From assembly GCF_006345805.1 (NCBI RefSeq), contig NW_021833615.1, positions 1 through 57,336 on the forward strand: DNA of 57,336 nucleotides. The letters are read 5' to 3'. The notes under the pieces are model-generated. The model was given only the letters and a program-made list of their open reading frames with translations, was not told the origin of the DNA and did not search any database. Within the stretch, counting starts at the first letter, position 1; each line of letters starts with the position of its first letter. Origin of the DNA: Octopus sinensis (Eukaryota). Both the position numbers and the translations under genes were made by a program. Below, piece by piece: positions 3,986 through 28,485 of the stretch.

Positions 3986-4440
3986 TCGCGCTTACACACA
4001 AACAGAGATAAAAAAAAAAGAAAGTACATGTTTCCACAATGCATGCAAGCGAGAGATAAAGTACTCAATACTAGAGATGTACAATTTATTCGAGGTTGTA
4101 AAACTACGAAGCACTTACTCCTTCCAAGAAGTTGGGAGTAACGACTTAAGAAGTTTCAAGCACCATGAAATAATTTGTGTGTGTGTATAAGCGTATGTGT
4201 ACATTCTATTGAAGCATATATCGATCTGTAATTGGTGGATACAATGAGCTGAGGGGAAATAATGGCATGCATTTGGTTGGAGAGGATATATTGAATGAGA
4301 TATGCCAAAAAAAAATTCTCACTTAACTCAAATATTCCCTCTTTGATGTGAAAAGAAAGCCAATACCGAGAGATAATGTTGGCGACTAGCAAGGAAAAGG
4401 GGAGGTAATCTAAAATCTAATACTTCACAAAATTATATCT

Positions 4441-4552
4441 AGGCACAGGCATGGCTGGGTGATAAGATGCTTGCTCACCAACCACATGGTTTCGTGTTCG
4501 GTCTCACTACATGGCGCTTTAGGCAAGTGTCTTTTACTATAACTACGGGCTG
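4441..4552 (+). mobile_element. SINE-A 5' head, truncated by a MITE
   Basis: Diverged head (ccaaccacatggttt...ggcaagtgtctt) ending at the MITE start. Confidence 0.75.
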
Positions 4553-5797
4553 GGATCTTTTCGGTTTGAACGGCAGTTTTTTAAAATAATTTTTAGGTAA
4601 CTAAAAAAATTTTAACTTCCTATACTGGTAGAATGTGTTTATAAAACATCTTTTTCTCTTGGCTAATTGAGAAAATTCTATAGTTTATAAGATATTTGTT
4701 GTTGTTTTCTTCAATTTCTGCTATTTCAACCAATCACTGACGTCTATTGAGGTGAAAACATTCTGTGCTGTATGAATATGTCTCTCGTTTAAGAAACAGA
4801 TTGGGTTTATTTACATTTGTGAAGAAGAAAAAAAGATACCCTTCCCCCATCCCTAACCCTAAAACAGATTGAAATGCAATAGATCGATACTAGGGTCATA
4901 ATTATGGGTGACAATTTCATACGACACCGCTAGAAAAAACTGCCGTTCAAACCGAAAAGATCCTTTGTAAGATATTTGTTGTTGCTTTTTCTTCAATTTC
5001 AACCAATCAATGACGTCCATTGAGGTAAACAACATTCTGTGCTGTATGAATAGGTTCCTCGTTTAAGAAACAGATTGGGTTTATTTACATTTGTGAAAAA
5101 AAAAAAGATGCCCTTTCCCCCATCCCTAACCCTAACCCGAAAACAGATTGAAATGCAATAGATCGATACTAGGGTCATAATTATGGGTGACAATTTCATA
5201 CGACACCACTAGAAAAAACTGCCGTTCAAACCGAAAATATCCTTTGTAAGATATTTGTTGTTGCTTTTTCTTCAATTTCAACTAATCAATGACGTCCATT
5301 GAGGTAAACAACATTCTGTGCTGTATGAATATGTCCCTCGTTTAAGAAACAGATTGGGTTTATTTACATTTGTGAAGAAAAAGAAGATACCCTTCCCCCC
5401 ACCCCTAACCCTAAAACAGATTGAAATGCAATAGCTCGATACTAGGGTCATAATTATGGGTGACAATTTTCAATACGACAAACCGCTAAAAAAACTGGCC
5501 GTTCCAAACCGAAAATATCCTTTGTAAGATATTTGTTGTTGCTTTTTCTTCAATTTCAACCAATCAATGACGTCCATTGAGGTAAACAACATTCTGTGCG
5601 TATGAATAGGTTCCTCGTTTAAGAAACAGATTGGGTTTATTTACATTTGTGAAGAAAAAAAGATACCCTTCCCCCTACCCCTAACCCTAACCCGAAAACA
5701 GATTGAAATGCAATAGATCGATACTAGGGTCATAATTATGGGTGACAATTTCATACGACACCGCTAGAAAAAACTGCCGTTCAAACCGAAGAGATCC
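4553..5797 (+). mobile_element. GGATC-terminal MITE (4553-4963) followed by three tandem copies of its 3' ~278 bp
   Basis: TIR GGATCTTTTCGGTTTGAACGGCAGTTTT and its reverse complement ending at 4963; repeat units start at 4964, 5243 and 5521; no TSD. Confidence 0.9.
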
Positions 5798-5994
5798 AAA
5801 CTCTGAAGGACCGCTGCAGTAATATGTGTGTGACGCTGAGAGGGAATATACTGCATAACTTATCTCCTGTATTTTCTTCTACCCGAAGCTAGGAATTTTT
5901 CAGTACCTCCTCGTTCTGTACACGATGCTACGGGTAGTCAAGGAACTAGAAATGTATTCGCCGTTCCGCAGAGAAAGAGAGAGAGAGAGAGACC

Positions 5995-7030
5995 GGATCT
6001 TTTTGGTTTGAACGGCAGTTTTTTTCTAGCGGTGTCATATGAAATTGTCACCCATAATTATGACCCTAGTATCGATCTATTGCATTTCAATCTGTTTTAG
6101 GGTTAGGGGTGGGGGAAGGGTATGTTTATGTTTATGTTTTCCAGTTTCAGCTCTTGAGCTGTGGCCATGCTGGTGTCTTTTTTTTTTCTTCACAAATGTA
6201 AATAAACCCAATCTGTTTCTTAAACGAGGGACATATTCATACGGCACAGAATGTTTACCTCAATGGACATCATTGATTGGTTGAAATTGAAGAAAAAGCA
6301 ACAACAAATATCTTACAAACTATAGAATTTTCTCAATAAAGCCAAGAGAAAAAGATGTTTTATAAACACATTCTACCAGTATACGAAGTTTAAAAGTGTT
6401 TAGTTACATGGAAATTATGTTAAAAAACTGCCGTTCAAACCGAAAAGATCCCTTCATTGGATCGTACCCCTTTTTGTTGTTGTTGTTGTTGTCGTTCCGT
6501 TCCAGTTGAGCCCTGATCCATCGGGCCTTTAGATCAAAGACCAAAAGTATTCCCACCATGACGAACCCAGCTTTTATTCGCACATTATGTACCAAGGACT
6601 ACATTATCTAAGTGTTTGTAGTTATTGTAGTTGTTGCTGCTTAGCACCAAATCAAGCCCGGTCCAGCCGTGACTATCCCGTCTGATTATAAGAACTACAT
6701 TAAACAGAGGAAGAACTGGTTCTTTTTGGTTACACATGTCTTCTCTTGGTGTTCCTTAGTATTATGTTGTGGTTCTTTGATCCTCGGTCAATCCTGTTCA
6801 AATGCATTCCAGCTATGACCATCCCATTTTTTTCCCTACTTGAAGGAAATCCAGGATCACATTATCCAACGTCTGTCTGTCTCTCTTCGAAAAAAAAAAA
6901 AAAAAGGGAAAAAAAAAAGACGGTAGGGAGTGATTATGAGTGAAAGAATTGGTTGCTATGTCTAGGAAATTGAAATTTTTTAGTTACCTAGAAATTATGT
7001 TAAAAACTGCCGTTCAAACCGAAAAGATCC
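5995..7030 (-). mobile_element. Composite MITE: inverted MITE + captured flank + extra terminal fragment
   Basis: 8-bp TSD GAGAGACC at 5987-5994 and 7031-7038; TIRs at both ends and internally ending at 6451; 6452-6974 is an inverted copy of about 10633-11168. Confidence 0.9.
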
Positions 7031-7172
7031 GAGAGACCTTTGAAATTACTCTCGATGTCTTTCAAACATCTATTGCCTGAAGCTAGCTAGAAAGGTTTCT
7101 CAGTAAATCAGCAATGAATACAGCATTTGTGCAAGTCAAATATGTCCGAAACATATTTGAATAGATCTAGAT

Positions 7173-7499
7173 CAGTGATTCTCAACCTGGGTTTATTGTA
7201 AGATTTTTGATGGTCCACGCAACAAAATAGTAAACTGGGGAGTCACAATACTAGTTTAGGGGCCCCTGAAAAAAATGTTGCTTTAGATGTATGTATTGCA
7301 AGAAACAGCTGGGTCTCTTTCTCTAACATTTTACAAAGTTCAACCGACACAAGTTAATGTGTGGAAAACAAAAAATAGGGATTTTGAAAAGAGTTTCTAT
7401 AAAACTGATTTTTAAACATGGAGTGGCCATAGGGATCCACCAAAATAAAATAGTAATTAAAGGGGTCCATAGATTAAAAAAAAAGATTTTGAACCCCTG
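7173..7499 (+). mobile_element. hAT (Charlie-like) MITE
   Basis: Termini CAGTGATTCTCAAC...TTTGAACCCCTG; flanks ATCTAGAT and CTTTAGAT resemble the NTCTAGAN hAT-Charlie target. Confidence 0.7.
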
Positions 7500-7555
7500 C
7501 TTTAGATGTATGTATTTGTATGTATTGCAAAAAACATCTTGCTTACTTTCTCTAA

Positions 7556-7940
7556 TCTCTCTCTATATAAAGCTGAAGTTGTCTGTGTGTGGCAGGTTTG
7601 GTAGCCTTCAACTAACACTATCTCCTCTGAGACCCTGCTGTGCAAGTTGACCAAAATTGAGAGTATGATAGAAAAGGCTTGCTTGTTCCTTCCGTAGAAG
7701 AAAATTCAAATCGGACCATGTTAACACCAAAAATTATTTACATCAAAAAGGTGCTTTTTTTCCTATGAAAATCCTTATTTTTTACGATTTTTTGACTGCT
7801 GTGTCGCCATTTTTCGGTGTATTTCAACCAGAAAAATGTTCACTTAAAGAGAATAACAAGCTACATAATGCAAAGTTTTTCAAAAATTCCAATTCTAAAG
7901 GGTTGAAACAAACCCAAGCAACGCCAGGCGATACTGCTAG
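7556..7940 (+). mobile_element. Non-autonomous Helitron
   Basis: A|TC 5' end, CTAG|T 3' end, subterminal GC-rich hairpin region (CCCAAGCAACGCCAGG), no TSD; homologues at 28512-29265. Confidence 0.85.
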
Positions 7941-8005
7941 TATTTGAAATAGTTTAATCTACACAAGTTAATGTGGGAAAGACAAAATAGGAATTTTGAA
8001 AGACG

Positions 8006-8204
8006 TTTGTGCGGGTGGCACATAAAAAGCACCCACTACACTCACGGAGTGGTTGGCGTTAGGAAGGGCATCTAGCCGTAGAAACACTGCCAGATTTGAC
8101 TGGGCCTGATGAAGCCTTCTGGCTTCACAGACCCCAGTAGAACCGTCCAACCCATGCTAGCATGGAAAGCGGACGCTAAACGATGATGATGATGATGATG
8201 ATGT
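8006..8204 (+). mobile_element. SINE-B 3' part with (GAT)n tail
   Basis: Family terminus CATGGAAAGCGGACGCTAAACGATGATGAT. Confidence 0.85.
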
Positions 8205-8462
8205 TTCTATAAAACTGATAGATTGTACAACATCGAATGGCTATAGGGGTCAACCAGGGTAAAATAGAAATCAAAGGGGTCTGTAGATTTAAAAAATGAT
8301 TGGGAACTCCTGACCTAGATGCTTGTTTTCTATATACTTCTTTTTGCAACAAACAGATATGTTTTCAACGGCGAGCTGACACAATCATTTCGGAACCAGG
8401 AGTAAAAACTTTACTTTTCCGGCTCTATACTTCCCGAGTTCAAAAACTGCTGAGGTTAATTT

Positions 8463-8860
8463 GGATCTTTTCGGTTTCACCGGCAGTTTTTTTTAAATAA
8501 TTTCCACGTAACTAAACACTTTTAAACTTCGTATACTGGTAGAATGTGTTTATAAAACATCTTTTCTCTTGGCTTTATTGAGGAAATTCTATACTTTGTA
8601 AGATATTTGTTGCTTTTGTTTCTTCAATTTCTGCAATTTCAACCAATCAATGACGTGTATTGAGGTAAAAACCATTCTGTGCCGTATTGGGTTTTATTTA
8701 CATTTGTGAAGAAAAAAAGATACCCTTCCCCAAACCCCTCACCCTAACCCTAACCCTAAAACAGATTGAAATGCAATAGATCGATACTAGGGTCATAATT
8801 ATGGGTAACAATTTCATATGACATCGTTAGAAAAAACTGCTGTTCAAACCGAAGAGATCC
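8463..8860 (+). mobile_element. GGATC-terminal MITE, single copy without TSD
   Basis: TIRs at both ends; interrupts an old SINE-C-like head on the left; right flank is unrelated. Confidence 0.9.
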
Positions 8861-9035
8861 CTAAAAACACCTTCCCTCAAGAAAAAAAAAAAATTCAGTT
8901 CTTTTGTCTGTACTAGAAACTACTAAATGATTTTAGTGAATGGGCAAACTGCGGCCCGCATGACTCTAAATGGCACGCCGAACGAAAAACTACCTTCGAT
9001 TTTCTTTTTTTTTTTTTTCTTTTTTTTAGTTTAAC

Positions 9036-9440
9036 AGGCGCAGGAGTGGCTGTGTGGTAAGTAGCTTGCTAACCAGCCACATGGTTCCGGGTTCTGTCCC
9101 ACTGCGTGGCATCTTGGGCAAGTGTCTTCTGCTATAGCCCCGGGCCAACCAATGCCTTGTGAGTGGATTTGGTAGACGGAAACTGAAAGAAGCCTGTCGT
9201 ATATATGTATATATATATATGTATGTGTGTCTGTGTTTGTCACCCTAGCATTGCTTGACAACCGATGGTGGTGTGTTTTACGGTCCCTGTTACTTAGCGG
9301 TTCGGCAAAAGAACAGTAGAATAAGTACTGGGCTTACAAAGAATAAGTCCCGGGATCGATTTGCTCAACTAAAGGCGGTGCTCCAGCATGCCGCCCAGTC
9401 AAATGACTGAAACAAGTAAAAGAGTAAAAGAGTAAAAGAG
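9036..9440 (+). mobile_element. SINE-A, full length
   Basis: tRNA-like head with A box TGGCTGTGTGG and B-box-like GGTTCTGTCCC, CORE-like CTTGGGCAAGT, tail GACTGAAACAAGTAAAAGAG. Confidence 0.9.
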
Positions 9441-10173
9441 TATATATTATATATATATATATATTATATACAGTCCAAACTATACTCAGGAGATAGAGAG
9501 ATGCGGCGTAGAAAGAGATATAGAGAGGGGGAGGCTAGGAACAGATAGCAGAGAGGGGGGGTTTAGTAAAAGAAAGATAAACAGAGAGAGGGTTAGGAAG
9601 AAACAGACAGGCAGAAAAGTAGGTAAGGAAGGGAAAGATAAACAGAGAGAGAGGAGGGGGTTAGGAAAAGAGTGATAGAAAGGAAAGAGGTAGTTCGAAA
9701 GAGACTGAGATATAAAAGGGAGGTTTAGGAAGAGAGATAGAGAGAGAAAAGTTAGAGAGAGGCAGCGAGAGAAAGAGGGGAGGTAAGAAGAGATTTATAT
9801 ATATATATATAGAGAGAGAGAAAGATGGGGAGGCAAAGAGAGATAAGGAGAGTAAGAGAGCGAACAAGAAAATGAGGGAGGGAGTTTGGGAAAAAGAACC
9901 ACCCTTTTACTTTGAATAATACCAGAGAGACGGGGGTGAAGGAGGAAGAGCGGGCACAAAGAAAGAGAGTCCTCATGGAGGTCGCTTAATACGCTAGAAA
10001 TAGCAGCCAAATTTGTGAATTCTACTCAAAATTTCATGTGTTGTAATAATTACACAATTTTTTTTTCCCACACAACCGTAACCGGTCTATAAGAAATTAT
10101 TATTATTATTAGTAGTAGTATTATTATTAAGCTAAATTTTAAACTTCTAAATGCGCAAAAAAAAAATATCTGC

Positions 10174-10570
10174 AGGCAGGAGTGGCTGTGTGGTAAGTAG
10201 CTTGCTAACCAACCACATGGTTCAGGGTTCAGTCCCACTGCGTGGCACCTTGGGCAAGTGTCTTCTGCTATAGCCCCGGGCCGACCAATGCCTTGTGAGT
10301 GGATTTGGTAGACGGAAACTGAAAGAAGCCTGTTGTATATATGTATATATATATATATGTATGTGTGTGTTTGTCCCCCTAGCATTGCTTGACAACCAAT
10401 GCTGGTGTGTTTACGTCCCCGTCACCTAGCGGTTCAGCAAAAGAGACCGATAGAATAAGTACTGGGCTTACAAAGAATAAGTCCCGGGGTCAATTTGCTC
10501 GACTAAAAGGCGGTGCTCCAGCATGGCCGCAGTCAAATGACTGAAACAAGTAAAAGAGTAAAAGAGTAAA
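10174..10570 (+). mobile_element. SINE-A, full length
   Basis: Same head, core and tail as 9036-9440. Confidence 0.9.
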
Positions 10571-11168
10571 TATTTTTGACATTTTTTTTCTCACTTCGAA
10601 CATCAAAAGCAATCCTCTGTACGGTCATTCAGTTTCCTAGACATAGCAACCAATTCATTCACTCCTAATCACTCCCTACAGTCTTTTTTTCTTTCTTTCT
10701 TTTTTTTTTTTTTTTTTTTTACGAAGAGAGACAGACAGACAGACAGACAGACGTTGGATAATGTGATCCTGGATTTCCTGCAAGTAGGGAAAAAGATGGG
10801 ATGGTCATGGCTGGAATGCCTTTGAACAGGATTGACCGAGGATCAAAGAACCACAACATAATACTAAGGAACACCAAGAGAAGACATGTGTTACCAAAAA
10901 GAACCAGTTCTTGCTCTATTTAACGTAGTTCTTATAATCAGACGGGATAGTCACGGCTGGACCGGGCTTGATTTGGTGCTAAGCAGCAACAACTACAATA
11001 ACTACAAACACTTAGATAATGTAGTCCTTGGTACATAATGTGCGAATAAAAGCTGGGTTCGTCATGGTGGGAATACTTTTGGTCTTTGATCTAAAGGCCC
11101 GATGGATCAGGGCTCAACTGGAACGGAACGACAAGAACAACAACAAAAAGGGGTACGATCCAATGAAG

Positions 11169-11849
11169 GGATCTTTTCGGTTTGAACGGCAGTTTTTAAT
11201 ATAATTTCTAGGTAACTAAAAAATTTTTAAACTTCCTATACTGGTAGAATGTGTTTATAAAACATCTTTTTCTCTTGGCTTTATTGAGAAAATTCTAGTT
11301 TGTAAGATATTTGTTGTTTTTTTTTTCTTCAATCTCTGCAATTTCAACCAATCATTGACGTCCATTGAGGTAAAATACATTCTGTGCCATATGAATATGT
11401 CCCTCGTTTTAGAAACAGATTGGGTTTAGGATCTTTTCTGTTTGAATGGCAGTTTTTAACATAATTTCTAGGTAACTAAAAAGTTTTAAACTTCATATAC
11501 TGGTAGAATGTGTGTTTATAAAACATCTTTTTCTCTTGGCTTTATTGAGAAAATTCTATAGTTTGTAAGATATTTGTTGTTTTTTTTCCTTCAATTTCTG
11601 AAATTTCAACCAATCAATGACGTCTATTGAGTTGAAAACATTATGTTCCGTATGAATATGTCCCTCATTTAAGAAACAGCTTGGGTTTATTTACATTTGT
11701 GAAGAAAAAAAGATACCCTTCCCCCCCACCCCTAACAACCCTAACCCTAAAACAGATTGAAATGCAATAGATCAATACTAGGGTCATAATTATGGGTGAC
11801 AATTTCATATGACACCGCTAGAAAAACTGCCGTTCAAACCGAAAGATCC
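11169..11849 (+). mobile_element. GGATC-terminal MITE with internal restart at 11429
   Basis: 8-bp TSD CAATGAAG at 11161-11168 and 11850-11857; second left TIR at 11429. Confidence 0.92.
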
Positions 11850-12244
11850 CAATGAAGTCCTAGATGAATAATGTCTCCGTTTTAAAAGATAGTAGATCGC
11901 GACTGCAAGGGAATATTCTTGCTCAGTAGGTCTGCTGGATTAGAGTCGACCTAGGGTTAAACAACAAGACCGGGCATTAAATAATGCAGTCGTAAATAGA
12001 CTTATGTTTGAGGGGGAAGGCGGGATGGTCATGGTTGGAGCAACTTTGATTATAAGTCTCCTGGAATATGGTTGACCTGGGCTCAAACCATCAACAACGA
12101 CAACAGTTAATTAGTTGAAAAAAAATAATTGATATAATTATATTGTTGTTATTTAGCCAGAGGTCCAACTTAAATTACAGAGATCTATGACCCAAGGCAT
12201 TCCAGACGTGACCATCAATGTCATTCTGCACCCTCATCGACATA

Positions 12245-12832
12245 ATATATGCTTTTCTACTCTAGGTACAGAGCCCGAAATATTGGGAAGGGTGCAAGTC
12301 GATTAGATCGACCCCAGTACGCAACTGGTACTTAATTTATTGACCCCGAAAGGATGAATGGTAAAGTCGGCCTCGGCGGAATTTGAACTCAGAACGTAAA
12401 GACACGAAATACCTATTTCTTTACTACCCACAAGGGGCTAAACACAGAGAGGACAAACAAGGACAGACAGACGGATTAAGTTGATTACATCGACCCCAGT
12501 GCGTAACTGGTACTTTATTTATCGACCCCGAAAGGATGAATGGTAAAGTTGGCCTCGGCGGAATTTGAACTCAGAACGTAACGGCAGACGAAATACCTAT
12601 TTCTTTACTACCCACAAGAGGCTAAACCTAGAGGGGACAAACAAGGACAGATAAATGGATTAAGTCAATTATATCGACCCCAGTGCGTAACTGGTACTTA
12701 TTTAATCGACCCCGAAAGGATGAAAGGCAAAGTCGACCTCGGCGGAATTTGAACTCAGAACATAAAGACGGACGAAATACCGCTACGCATTTCACCCGGC
12801 GTGCTAACGTCTCTGCCAGCACGCCGCCTTCA
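12245..12832 (-). mobile_element. SINE-C trimer (head + three bodies)
   Basis: Head AGGCGGCGTGCTGGCAG..., B box GAGTTCAAATTCC; junctions at 12412 and 12596; the last unit has a different tail. Confidence 0.88.
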
Positions 12833-16110: not shown

Positions 16111-17782
16111 ACGATCAGCCACCTTTTATATATGGATGACCTAAAACTATACGCTACAAATGACAAACAGCTGGAAACATTACTAAAGACAGTTCATGGA
16201 TTTACCAAAGAAATAGATATGAAATTTGGATTAGAGAAATGTGCCAAAGTAACCCTGAAAAGAGGAAAACTAATTAAGAGTAGCAACATCACACTAGATA
16301 AAACCAATGAAATAAAAGAATTAGACCAAAGCCAAACTTACAAATACTTAGGAATCCATGCAATAGATAGACACACCAACACAAATGAAAGAGAAAATAA
16401 AAAAAGAATATTATAGACAAGTCAGATCAATACTGAAACAGAGCTCAATGCTAAAAACAAGATAATAGGTATCAACACTTTAGCCGTCCCAGTTATAAGT
16501 TACAGCTACAATATCCTTAACTGGACACTAAATGAACTGACCAAAATAGATAGGAAAACAAGAAAAATAATGACAGGATGTAGGATGCATCACCCAAAAT
16601 TTGACATAGAAAGGCTATATATATAATGTATAGATGGTGGTAGAGGCCTTATACAGCTGGAAAACTACTATAAAATAACCACCATAGGACTGCAAAAATA
16701 TCTACTTCAGAAGGAAGGAAAACTGATACAAATAGCAGCAAAACATGAGCAAAACAAAAAATGTTCTCAGTATTTAAGGAAGCTGACAAATACAAACAAG
16801 AAATCATACCACCTAATAAACATGAAGAAGAAGAGATGATGATGAGAAACAACAAAAGCTCTATAAAACAAATGAAATCCAAACTAAAAACAGAACAGCA
16901 ATGAACCATGATAAAACGATGGCAAGAAAAGCCCCTTCATGGCAAATACTGGACTAAACTAAATGCAAAAGAAATAGACAAAGAAAAATCCCAACAATGG
17001 TTGAGAAGCTCAGGACTCAAAGCAGAGACAGAAGGATTTTTAATTGCAGCACAAGACCAAAGCCTCCCCACCAGAAATTACCAAAAACATGTAATGAAAA
17101 GAAATATAACAAGTAACTGTATAATATGTGGAGATGGACAAGAAACAATAAATCATATTATCTCTGGCTGCCCAGTCCTGGCTAAGAAGGAATATATTCA
17201 CAGACACGACAGAGTTGGGACCTATATACACTGGAAACTATGCCAACATTATGGAATAACAACAGAAAAAAGATGGTATAGGCACACACCAGAAAAGGTC
17301 ACAGAAAACGAGAAAGCAACCATACTCTGGGATATGCCAATACACACAGATAGAGAAATTAAGGCCAACAGACCAGATATGGTTGTCAGAGATCATGAAG
17401 AAAAAAAATGTTTTCTAATTGATGAATCAATACCAGTGGATGACAACGTGTCTCTAAAAGAAATGGAGAAACTTTCAAAATACAAAGACCTGGAAATAGA
17501 GGTAACCAGAATGTGGAATCTAAAAGCAGAAACAATTCCTATCATAATAGGTGCATTAGGCATGATAAAAAAATATTCAGACAAATACATAACAAAAACA
17601 TCAGGACTTACAAACACATATAACATACAGAAAATTGCACTACTAGGCACTGCACACATCCTACGCAGAACACTTTCCATACAATAACCATCAGAGCATC
17701 ACAACAAATCACAGCACATACCCAAGGCACCACAGAGCTGCGCTCGGTAGTGAAGTGAAAGCACGATATAAAAAATATACTA

Positions 17783-17850: not shown

Positions 17851-17922
17851 GGGGGTATAGCTCAGTGGGAGAGCATTCGACTGCAGATCGAGAGGTCCGC
17901 GGTTCAATCATGGGTGCCCCCT
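17851..17922 (+). tRNA. tRNA-Cys: tRNA-Cys(GCA)-like sequence, probably a pseudogene or SINE head
   Basis: Acceptor stem GGGGGTA/TGCCCCC, D arm, anticodon stem TTCGA/TCGAG with loop CTGCAGA (GCA at 17883-17885); T stem CGCGG/ATGGG has two mismatches. Confidence 0.85.
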
Positions 17923-17959: not shown

Positions 17960-18035
17960 GAATGGCGGTGCCCCAGCATGGCTACAGCTCGTGAGCTGAA
18001 ACTAGATAAAATAAAAATAAAAAATAAAATAAATA
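17960..18035 (+). mobile_element. SINE/LINE-type 3' tail
   Basis: GGCGGTGCCCCAGCATGGCTACAGCTCGTGAGCTGAAACTAG + (AAAAT)n; related to the SINE-A tail GGCGGTGCTCCAGCATGGCC. Confidence 0.7.
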
Positions 18036-27812: not shown

Positions 27813-28205
27813 GTGCTGCTTAACCTCAGATCGACCCTGATGCAGTAGGCACATGATCAAAGACGTTCCAGCTATGACCATCATGTCTTTGCTTTACATA
27901 AATAATCACTGTGCTGCTTAAACTCAGATCGACCCTGATGCAGTAGGCACATGATCAAAGACGTTCCAGCTATGACCATCATGTCTTTGCTTTACATAAA
28001 TAATCACTGTGCTGCTTAATCTCAGATCGACCCTGATGCAGTAGGCACATGATCAAAGACGTTCCAGCTATGACCATCATGTCTTTGCTTTACATAAATA
28101 ATCACTGTGCTGCTTAATCTCAGATCGACCCTGATGCAGTGGGCACATGATCAAAGACGTTCCAGCTATGACCATCATGTCTTTGCTTTACATAAATAAT
28201 CACTG
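27813..28205 (+). repeat. 4 x 98-bp near-identical tandem repeat
   Basis: Units start at 27813, 27911, 28009 and 28107; contains the dispersed motif TTCCAGCTATGACCATC. Confidence 0.95.
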
Positions 28206-28214
28206 CATCATTGT

Positions 28215-28485
28215 ATTATCACTGGTCACAATGCGCTTCCTCGCACTATTGTAGCTTTTGAATGATGCCACCATGCTGGTCAGACAGGCAGGCAGGCAGG
28301 CAGGCCAACATCCCCTCTGAATAGAATGCCAGTCTGTAACTGGGTTACCCATTTACAGCTAAGTAGACTGGAGCAATGTGAAATGAAGTGTTTTTATCAA
28401 AAACATAATACATCATCAGTCTGGAAATTGAAACACCAATTTGGCTATCATGAACGCAACACCCGAACCACTTGGCCATGAAACA
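28215..28485 (-). mobile_element. Old SINE-D-type copy
   Basis: CTGGTCACAATGCGCTTC block shared with 44220; conserved central block GACTGGAGCAATGTGAAATGAAGTG also at 42895-42925. Confidence 0.6.

What the first reader, a model, noticed from the sequence alone, without database searches (positions are those of the whole stretch)
5995..7030. Composite MITE that captured about 520 bp of flank from a sibling copy 4 kb away
Seen: a perfect 8-bp TSD GAGAGACC brackets [inverted MITE][6452-6974][56-bp left-end fragment]. The middle piece is an inverted, slightly diverged copy of about 10633-11168. It begins with CTTCATTG, the reverse complement of the TSD of the MITE at 11169. Oddly, the MITE part carries diagnostic bases of the 8463 copy (TTTCCAYGTAACTAAACAC), while the end fragment carries those of the 11169/4553 type (TTTCTAGGTAACTAAAA). 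Inference: a Pack-type or composite transposon made by local hopping, with conversion or two donors involved.
Basis: partly seen in the sequence, partly recalled or inferred. Interest (0 to 1): 0.7.

Follow-up and report, generated by a model that had tools for sequence, protein, structure and literature searches.

The report
MITE carrying its sibling's flanking DNA
A small non-coding transposon (MITE) here carries about 520 bp copied from the DNA beside a sibling copy 4 kb away; the structure is real, but it is a known kind of transposon-mediated duplication and has no evident function.

Summary
Window 5995-7030 lies between a perfect 8-bp duplication, GAGAGACC. It consists of a full inverted MITE (5995-6451), then CTTCATTG (6452-6459), then an inverted copy of 10626-11160 (6460-6974), then a second MITE left end of 56-58 bp (6973/6975-7030).

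CTTCATTG is the reverse complement of the target-site duplication (TSD) CAATGAAG. That TSD flanks the sibling element at 11169-11849 on both sides, so the DNA was copied from the sibling locus into the composite.

The junction between the extra left end and the captured DNA lies in register within a 12/16 similarity between the MITE and the flank, which points to a template switch.

The full MITE is a mosaic. It groups with the 8463 copy over positions 1-132 and with the 4964-5797 tandem units over 133-267. It never groups with the sibling's own MITE.

This is transposition-independent gap filling of the Pack-TIR type. Main rival (about 0.3): a 599-bp duplication arose at the sibling locus and the whole unit then transposed.

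No outside sequence of this genome could be reached, so copy number and junction support from reads remain untested. This is a known kind of event and of modest interest.

The parts
5987..5994 (.). Left copy of the 8-bp target-site duplication GAGAGACC (the end of a (GA)n run)
   Evidence: chance estimate
5995..6451 (-). MITE B: full-length copy of 457 bp, inverted relative to the other copies. Its right-end terminus is at 5995 and its left-end terminus at 6451. It is a mosaic: positions 42-68 match the 8463 copy, and positions 133-267 match the tandem units at 4964-5797
6123..6175 (-). Insertion of about 53 bp private to B, resembling the 3' tail of the local SINE-type repeats (best match 17972-18021). 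It is either filler DNA or a 5'-truncated retroposon tail
6452..6459 (-). CTTCATTG, one copy (reverse complement) of the sibling element's target-site duplication CAATGAAG
6460..6974 (-). X': inverted copy of the sibling's left flank X (10626-11160). Divergence is patchy: about 4-5% over the part matching 10626-10925 and 1 mismatch plus a 3-bp indel over the part matching 10926-11168
6973..7030 (-). E: second MITE left end, positions 1-56/58, of the family consensus type. Its terminus at 7030 abuts the right TSD. Its inner junction with X' has a 2-bp overlap and lies in register within a 12/16 similarity between MITE positions 57-72 and X 10624-10640
7031..7038 (.). Right copy of the target-site duplication GAGAGACC
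10626..11160 (+). X: the parental sequence of the captured piece. It occurs in the window only here and in the composite
11161..11168 (.). Left TSD CAATGAAG of sibling element D
11169..11849 (+). Sibling element D, a compound of D1 (left part, positions 1-267, at 11169-11428) joined at the exact left terminus to D2 (full MITE, 11429-11849). D1 and D2 are about 90-93% alike
11850..11857 (.). Right TSD CAATGAAG of sibling element D
8463..8860 (+). MITE copy C, the likely template or conversion donor for B positions 42-98 (1 mismatch in 64 nt). It has no recognisable TSD
4553..5797 (+). MITE copy A: a full element (4553-4963) followed by three tandem 279-bp units (positions 133 to the right terminus). 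These units are the closest relatives of B positions 133-267

Best explanation
What it is (shown). This is a compound MITE. One 8-bp target-site duplication encloses, in the family's canonical orientation:
- left end, positions 1-58
- 535 bp of the DNA that lies to the left of sibling element D
- one copy of D's target-site duplication
- a full MITE

The DNA was copied from D's locus, not the other way round.

How it most likely arose (inferred).
1. A simple MITE (B0) had inserted at GAGAGACC in the orientation opposite to its siblings C and D, which lie 2-5 kb away.
2. During replication or break repair inside B0, the growing strand left B0 about 58 nt from its left end.
3. It landed on D's flank at a short similarity (TT.A..TTCCTA.AC).
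4. It copied about 535 bp of flank, then D's TSD, and ran into D's MITE.
5. It returned to B0 through ordinary MITE-to-MITE homology, possibly by way of sibling C for positions 42-98.

The same product results if the strand travelled in the reverse direction.

This is transposition-independent gap filling, or serial template switching, of the kind that produces single-copy Pack-TIRs in animals. The special feature is that one switch used the full homology between sibling MITEs. The filler is therefore the sibling's terminus plus its flank, and the sibling's TSD is preserved inside.

No function is implied. The captured DNA has no long ORF and no match to any family searched.
For: - Structure, TSDs and direction of copying.
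- X' is a separate, diverged genomic copy (21 mismatches plus indels), so it is not an assembly chimera.
- The junction of E with X' is in register with a 12/16 similarity between the two parents. Only 17 of 20000 random windows reach this for D1, and 12-85 across the four copies tested. This points to an annealing or template-switch junction.
- B is not a copy of D's MITE. Region trees put B with C over positions 1-132 (support 0.92) and with A2-A4 over 133-267 (support 0.90), and never with D1 or D2 (distances). In contrast, X' is 93-97% like X. This is expected if B is mostly the resident element and only the terminus and flank came from D.
- The present donor locus needs no structure that is not observed.
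- Both putative templates are inverted relative to B and lie within 5 kb.
- Published survey of 100 animal genomes (PMC8277862). Single-copy Pack-TIRs arise mostly by gap filling in a resident TE. 57% lie within 15 kb of the parent, mostly within 5 kb. Microhomology has a median of 2 bp. In primates, 94% have the simple TE at the orthologous site in outgroups.
- B also carries a second small filler-like insert.
Against: - No outside sequence could be obtained, so neither a simple MITE at this site in another haplotype or species nor the copy number of the composite could be checked.
- E and B positions 42-58 differ at 4 sites. Every model, this one included, therefore needs either a third template (C) or a later C-to-B conversion.
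- No base in B beyond the conserved terminal repeat positively marks it as D-derived.
- In a classical two-ended break repair (SDSA), the new strand should have annealed through its 58-nt MITE homology and lost the flank. The model therefore needs a replicative (3'-end priming) version.
- The divergence between X and X' is uneven: 12 of about 240 against 2 of about 284 (my counts). This needs a later conversion between the two inverted copies.
- The cited survey deliberately excluded cases whose parent sequence abuts a TE, so its frequencies are only a prior.
Confidence: 0.5

Rival explanations
1. Composite (macro)transposition. At the D locus a backward replication slip between the similar motifs at MITE positions 57-72 and X 10624-10640 made a 599-bp tandem duplication: X, TSD and left end 1-58, twice. 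Transposase then used the upstream 58-bp left end and the MITE's right end, and moved the whole unit 4 kb to GAGAGACC, in inverted orientation. The duplication at D was later lost. The MITE part was later overwritten in two patches by neighbours C and A2-A4.
For: - There is a perfect 8-bp TSD exactly outside two correctly oriented termini.
- E differs from D1 at only 1 of 58 positions.
- The same homeology explains a 599-bp slip equally well.
- All four MITE loci sit within 7.3 kb of a 57-kb window. By my estimate the chance of this is about 0.01, which fits local hopping.
- Precedents exist: maize macrotransposons and the compound Ds-l4-483 (PMC3260210), and P-element transduction or 'end bypass' for parent sequences linked to a TE (PMC8277862).
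Against: - The donor locus today has no left end at 10626, so an extra loss step is needed.
- B is not the sister of D1 or D2 in any region, so two conversion patches, or a replaced donor element, are needed.
- It is unknown whether 58 bp of left end suffice for this transposase.
- No second copy of the composite exists in the window.
Confidence: 0.3
2. Ac/Ds-type alternative transposition. The left end of D's MITE on one sister chromatid and the right end on the other were inserted together into a not-yet-replicated site 4 kb away. The element and its flank were re-replicated, the forks aborted, and the two broken ends were joined. This left a 'composite insertion' of transposon ends around a segmental duplication of the donor flank.
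For: The product has the published anatomy of maize composite insertions: TE termini, an 8-bp TSD, duplicated donor-flanking DNA, and an internal junction with 0-4 bp of microhomology (PMC4270019). The inverted orientation and short distance fit such a model. The donor stays intact.
Against: - The published cases need two nearby elements with reversed ends, and none is seen at D.
- The internal junction here is guided by a 12/16 similarity rather than by blunt or short-microhomology end joining.
- B is not D-like.
- The superfamily is unknown, and the terminal repeat begins GGATC, which from my own knowledge is not the usual hAT start.
Confidence: 0.07
3. X is not unique flank. It is part of a longer dispersed repeat that is regularly found next to this MITE, so the resemblance between the two loci reflects a common longer element rather than a local capture.
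For: X and the DNA on the other side of D share a degenerate 33-nt motif that also resembles a 98-bp tandem repeat at 27820-28219. The genome could not be searched.
Against: - Apart from low-complexity runs and that weak motif, X occurs only twice in 57 kb.
- D's MITE is a clean insertion into X|Y with CAATGAAG on both sides. The composite holds X plus exactly one copy of that TSD and no Y. This is what a copy of D's junction predicts, not what a shared longer element predicts.
Confidence: 0.08
4. Assembly artefact: reads from the D locus and from a simple MITE were joined wrongly through the shared repeat.
For: Repeat clusters of this kind are error-prone in assemblies, and no reads were available to check.
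Against: - X' differs from X at 21 positions and by several indels.
- B differs from every other copy.
- The E|X' junction sequence exists nowhere else in the window.
- The structure is closed by a perfect TSD. A chimera of existing loci would carry their sequences unchanged.
Confidence: 0.03

Closest known systems
Single-copy Pack-TIRs of animals made by transposition-independent gap filling (Tan et al. 2021, Nat Commun, PMC8277862)
   Same: Non-TE DNA of 100-5000 bp sits between two parts of one TIR element. The parent sequence lies on the same chromosome less than 5 kb away. There is microhomology at a breakpoint. The two breakpoints in the TE are close together. Only a single copy is seen.
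   Different: Here the parent sequence directly abuts a sibling copy of the same TE, and that study's pipeline excludes such cases. One of the two switches used full TE-to-TE homology, so an extra internal terminus and the sibling's TSD were copied in. The host is an unidentified invertebrate.
Compound Ds-l4-483 of maize (Du et al. 2011, BMC Genomics, PMC3260210)
   Same: A regular element with perfect TIRs is followed by trapped foreign DNA and then a truncated duplicate of the same element's end, finishing in a perfect TIR and a TSD.
   Different: In Ds-l4-483 the element's own TSD occurs three times and the filler comes from other chromosomes. Here the internal 8-mer is the TSD of a different (sibling) copy, and the filler is that sibling's flank.
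Maize Ac/Ds macrotransposons and composite insertions (PMC3260210 citing Huang and Dooner; Zhang et al. 2014, eLife, PMC4270019)
   Same: Two transposon ends and one 8-bp TSD enclose DNA that flanked the donor element. The internal junction is made by repair.
   Different: Those cases start from two separate elements, or from an element and a fractured element, seen at the donor, and they span kilobases to 100 kb. No second end is seen at the donor here, and the unit is 1 kb.
P-element transduction, or 'end bypass' (as summarised in PMC8277862)
   Same: The flank of a TE copy travels with that copy, so the parent sequence is linked to a TE.
   Different: End bypass uses a chance TIR-like sequence in the flank as a surrogate end. 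Here the far end is a true 56-58 bp copy of the family's left end, joined at a template-switch junction.

Membership tests
MITE (short non-autonomous TIR DNA transposon) | Terminal inverted repeats | tested here: met
   The first 30 nt of the two ends are perfectly complementary in copy A1 and 29 of 32 in B. The consensus is GGATCTTTTCGGTTTGAACGGCAGTTTTT.
MITE (short non-autonomous TIR DNA transposon) | Target-site duplication of fixed length | tested here: met
   Perfect 8-bp duplications occur at two loci, GAGAGACC and CAATGAAG. Copies A and C have none (my reading), so the count is 2 of 4 loci.
MITE (short non-autonomous TIR DNA transposon) | Small size and no coding capacity | tested here: met
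   Copies are 398-457 bp. The longest stop-free stretch in a single copy is 84 codons, in B only. A conserved 66-codon frame has no relatives among 1.84 billion proteins beyond two chance-level hits.
MITE (short non-autonomous TIR DNA transposon) | High copy number, and an autonomous partner with the same ends | not testable with these tools
   Only four loci are seen, all within 4.5-12 kb of this window. No matches were found in the metagenome or viral collections.
hAT superfamily | 8-bp TSD | tested here: met
hAT superfamily | Terminal motif of the YARNG type and the nTnnnnAn target preference (from my own knowledge of the superfamily) | tested here: not met
   The ends start GGATC. Neither TSD fits nTnnnnAn on either strand. 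With only two TSDs the target test is weak. I do not file the family under hAT, and the superfamily is left open (P and some Mutator-like elements also make 8-bp TSDs).
hAT superfamily | hAT transposase in an autonomous relative | not testable with these tools
   There is no transposase ORF in the window. The only long ORF of a mobile element is the C-terminal part of a LINE protein.
Pack-TIR (operational definition of PMC8277862) | Internal non-TE sequence of 100-5000 bp between two parts of the same TIR element, each covering at least 10 bp of a consensus terminus | tested here: met
   523 bp (6452-6974) lie between B, which reaches the right terminus, and E, which reaches the left terminus.
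Pack-TIR (operational definition of PMC8277862) | Parent copy at least 90% identical, with a length ratio of 80-120% | tested here: met
   92.8% over 544 aligned columns; 523 bp against 543 bp.
Pack-TIR (operational definition of PMC8277862) | Unique best parent in the genome | tested here: inconclusive
   The parent is unique within the 57-kb window. The genome is not available.
Pack-TIR (operational definition of PMC8277862) | No TE within 100 bp of the parent copy (a control against segmental duplication) | tested here: not met
   The parent X ends 8 bp from sibling MITE D. By that pipeline's rule this case would have been discarded. It works like a Pack-TIR but falls outside the operational definition.
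Composite transposon / macrotransposon | Two correctly oriented ends and a single TSD around the whole unit | tested here: met
Composite transposon / macrotransposon | A donor locus with two ends flanking the mobilised segment | tested here: not met
   10560-10640 holds no MITE end. This could have been lost since, so the test is not decisive.
Composite transposon / macrotransposon | Evidence that the unit moved: several copies with different TSDs, or an empty site in a relative | not testable with these tools
   The junction-spanning ORFs are not on record in the public assemblies and the 6404-6595 ORF has no homologues.

The most novel reading that the evidence does not exclude
The family is, or recently was, active in this animal genome, and it can move host DNA as a macrotransposon using only a 58-bp left end together with a full element. 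The cluster at 4.5-12 kb would then record local hopping, insertion into sibling copies, and flank transduction. It would be a natural animal counterpart of maize Ac/Ds macrotransposition, carried out by a MITE.
Probability: 0.3. Interest if true: 0.45.

Novelty: new member of a known kind. Interest (0 to 1): 0.3.

Why it matters
It is a clean, self-documenting example of how clustered DNA-transposon copies duplicate neighbouring host DNA. The sibling's target-site duplication is preserved inside the product, so parent, direction and both junctions can be read from one 7-kb stretch.

Cases whose parent sequence abuts a TE are filtered out of the published animal surveys. This class (homology-guided read-through into a sibling's flank, or true transduction) is therefore probably under-counted.

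With population or sister-species data, this locus could separate the two proposed routes: gap filling in place, or template switch followed by transposition.

It also creates a 0.5-kb inverted repeat with a 3.65-kb spacer, which could promote inversion or further conversion. Nothing suggests a function for the host.

Tried and rejected
External data. All of these searches were empty:
- Exact-pattern scans of the metagenome collection with a conserved internal 20-mer and a 22-mer from the terminal repeat, and of viral contigs.
- Exact look-ups of four ORFs spanning the junctions, B's private insert and X'.
- A word-index protein search with the junction ORF.
- A full HMMER scan with a conserved MITE frame (two chance-level hits only).

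Organism. The LINE ORF at 16908-17687 has relatives across marine invertebrates. The nearest are an unnamed Logan contig (90%) and GCA_024449705.1 (80%). Accession searches in the literature gave nothing. From memory the SINE resembles those of cephalopods; this is untested and I did not rely on it.

Ideas rejected:
- The composite is the source and D the copy. Rejected because D has its TSD on both sides and the composite has only one copy.
- A simple inversion by recombination between the inverted MITEs. Rejected because X is still at D, and the composite ends in E plus the TSD rather than in the inverted spacer.
- A second full MITE once inserted at 10626 and was later cut down. Unnecessary, and it does not explain the in-register similarity at the junction.
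- Classical two-ended SDSA. Disfavoured because the 58-nt MITE homology should have captured the new strand before the flank was kept.
- D's compound state argues against composite transposition. Dropped, because D1|D2 can be a later nested insertion followed by recombination between the two right halves.
- A paralogous empty or simple site for the composite's flanks within the window. None exists.

Full report
**Setting.** The window is eukaryotic, AT-rich and full of microsatellites, SINE-type repeats and LINE fragments. The organism could not be identified. A LINE ORF at 16908-17687 has relatives in many marine invertebrates.

**The MITE family.** A family of 398-457-bp elements occurs at four loci, all between 4.5 and 12 kb of the 57-kb window. 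Its members have perfect terminal inverted repeats of about 30 bp (GGATCTTTTCGGTTTGAACGGCAGTTTTT) and no coding capacity.

| Locus | Coordinates | Structure |
|---|---|---|
| A | 4553-5797 | Full copy plus three tandem 279-bp units |
| Composite | 5995-7030 | The finding |
| C | 8463-8860 | Single copy, no TSD |
| D | 11169-11849 | Left part D1 joined to full copy D2 |

Two loci have perfect 8-bp target-site duplications. I call the elements MITEs on structure. The superfamily stays open: the TSD length fits hAT, but the GGATC ends do not, and no transposase is at hand.

**Check of the observation.**
- GAGAGACC is at 5987-5994 and 7031-7038, directly outside the termini.
- 5995-6451 is a complete inverted MITE (B).
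- 6452-6459 is CTTCATTG.
- 6460-6974 (X') is an inverted copy of 10626-11160 (X). A 413-nt block is 97% complementary, and identity is 92.8% over 544 columns with indels.
- 6973/6975-7030 (E) is left-end positions 1-56/58.

The chance of the 8/8 match is 2e-5 from composition. It is 7e-4 when measured as identical 8-mers at that spacing in this low-complexity window.

**Direction of copying.** Element D has CAATGAAG on both sides (11161-11168 and 11850-11857). It is therefore a normal insertion into a site X|Y. The composite holds X, exactly one copy of that 8-mer next to a MITE left terminus, and no Y. X' is therefore a copy of D's left junction. The reverse direction would need an 8-bp coincidence.

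**Not an assembly chimera.** X' carries 21 mismatches and several indels relative to X. It is a separate genomic copy.

**X is low-copy in the window.** Apart from homopolymer runs and a weak 33-nt motif, X occurs only at these two places. Whether it is dispersed elsewhere in the genome could not be tested.

**The junction E|X'.** The MITE parent continues ...AAAAAATTT|TTAAACTTCCTATAC. The flank parent reads ...CATTCAGTTTCCTAGAC. The composite reads ...AAAAAATTT|CAATTTCCTAGAC. The crossover has a 2-bp overlap. It lies in register within a stretch where the two parents match at 12 of 16 positions. Depending on which MITE copy is used, 12-85 of 20000 random windows reach that score. This is the mark of an annealing or template-switch junction, not of blunt end joining.

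**The MITE part is a mosaic**.

| Positions of B | Finding |
|---|---|
| 42-68 | Shares five states found otherwise only in C. Over 34-98, B and C differ once, at a CpG |
| 133-267 | Shares a 10-bp deletion and three substitutions with tandem units A2-A4: 3-4 differences in 117, against 8 to D1 and 12 to D2 |

- Region trees put B with C over positions 1-132 (support 0.92) and with A2-A4 over 133-267 (0.90). They never put B with D1 or D2.
- E is identical to the family's majority state and one base from D1.
- E and B positions 1-58 differ at four sites and one indel. They therefore cannot be two untouched copies of one template. Every model needs a third template or a later conversion.

**Uneven divergence between X and X'.** I count about 12 mismatches in the roughly 240 unambiguous bases of 10626-10925. 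I count 2 differences in the roughly 284 bases from 10926 through the TSD into the terminal repeat (my counts; I estimate the contrast at about P = 0.003, not computed with a tool). This indicates continuing exchange between the two inverted copies.

**Mechanism.** Two routes give the observed product.

*Route 1: composite transposition.* A 599-bp slip duplication arises at D. Transposition then runs from the upstream 58-bp left end to the MITE's right end. This route needs:
- loss of the duplication at D
- two conversion patches in B
- a 58-bp end that is sufficient for the transposase

*Route 2: in-place gap filling or serial template switching.* The event takes place inside a resident simple MITE (E continuous with most of B), using the inverted siblings as templates. 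This route needs:
- no unseen donor structure
- no separate explanation for why B is not D-like, since that follows directly
- only one extra template (C) to absorb the C-like patch in the same event

**Published priors.** A survey of 100 animal genomes found that single-copy Pack-TIRs arise mostly by such transposition-independent gap filling. They show a strong bias to parent sequences within 5-15 kb, a median microhomology of 2 bp, and the simple TE present at the orthologous site in outgroups (PMC8277862). That survey excluded parent sequences that abut a TE and noted that such cases might come from transduction ('end bypass'). Its figures therefore serve only as a prior.

**Ranking.** I rank route 2 at about 0.5 and route 1 at about 0.3. 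A maize-type composite insertion by alternative transposition (PMC4270019) is at about 0.07. A dispersed-repeat explanation and an assembly artefact make up the rest.

**Comparison with known cases.** The closest described objects are:
- animal Pack-TIRs
- the maize compound element Ds-l4-483: a full element, trapped DNA and a truncated duplicate end (PMC3260210)
- maize macrotransposons and composite insertions
- P-element transduction

The particular feature here is that the filler is a sibling's terminus and flank, chosen through TE-to-TE homology, with the sibling's TSD kept inside. This is a further example of a known kind, not a new kind.

**Limits.** No sequence from this genome outside the window could be reached. 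Copy number of the composite, support for the junctions from reads, the state of the site in relatives, the subfamily structure and the transposase are all untested. The tests that would decide are listed under next steps.

Noticed in passing
window 4553-5797: MITE copy A is a full element followed by three tandem 279-bp units. Each unit runs from internal position 133 to the exact right terminus (junction ...GATCC|TTTGTAAG...). The first unit differs from the other three by a 10-bp indel. One possible origin is a MITE inserted into a sibling, then recombination between the homologous halves and unequal crossing-over. The element has no TSD, and about 35 bp of the SINE it interrupts (4429-4552, resuming near 5798) are missing.
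   Followed up: partly
window 11169-11849: Sibling D is itself compound. Left part D1 (positions 1-267) is joined at the exact left terminus to a full copy D2, and the pair sits within one TSD. D1 and D2 differ at 18 of 257 positions plus 5 gaps, which is more than X differs from X'. This fits a nested second insertion followed by recombination between the two right halves.
   Followed up: partly
window 6123-6175 (compare 17972-18021, 9380-9440, 10510-10575): B carries a private insert of about 53 bp that matches the 3' tail of the local SINE-type repeats (CCAGCATGGCYACAGCTC..GAGCTGAAAC followed by an A-rich microsatellite). It is either filler DNA from a repair event or a 5'-truncated retroposon tail.
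   Followed up: partly
every MITE copy, for example window 8742-8759 in C: Each copy contains two or three tandem CCCTAA units, the complement of the TTAGGG telomere repeat, at the same internal position.
   Followed up: no
window 4553-11849: All four loci of the family lie within 7.3 kb, and none is in the other 50 kb. By my estimate the chance of this is about 0.01. The flanks are unrelated, so this is not a segmental duplication. It suggests local hopping or insertion next to siblings.
   Followed up: partly
window 6460-6974 versus 10626-11160: The captured piece and its parent form a 0.5-kb inverted repeat with a 3.65-kb spacer. Their divergence is about 5% in the distal half and under 1% in the 285 bp next to the MITE, which suggests a later gene-conversion tract. 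Such a repeat could also mediate an inversion polymorphism.
   Followed up: partly
window 17851-17922: A tRNA-Cys(GCA) is called by both ARAGORN and Rfam (43.9 bits). It is followed within 50 bp by a SINE-type tail, so it may be the head of a tRNA-derived SINE rather than a tRNA gene.
   Followed up: no
window 9024-9440 and 10160-10575: Two copies of a roughly 415-bp SINE-type repeat, 90-95% alike, lie 1136 bp apart. A third, truncated copy at 4429-4552 is interrupted by MITE A.
   Followed up: no
window 16908-17687: A 259-codon ORF encodes the C-terminal part of a LINE protein. The zf-RVT domain is annotated on close homologues. It has over 500 relatives across marine invertebrates, the nearest at 90% (a Logan contig) and 80% (GCA_024449705.1).
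   Followed up: partly
window 12296-12781 and 27820-28219: There are tandem repeats with a 184-bp period (2.7 copies) and a period of about 98 bp. The second weakly resembles a 33-nt motif scattered through X and Y around element D.
   Followed up: no
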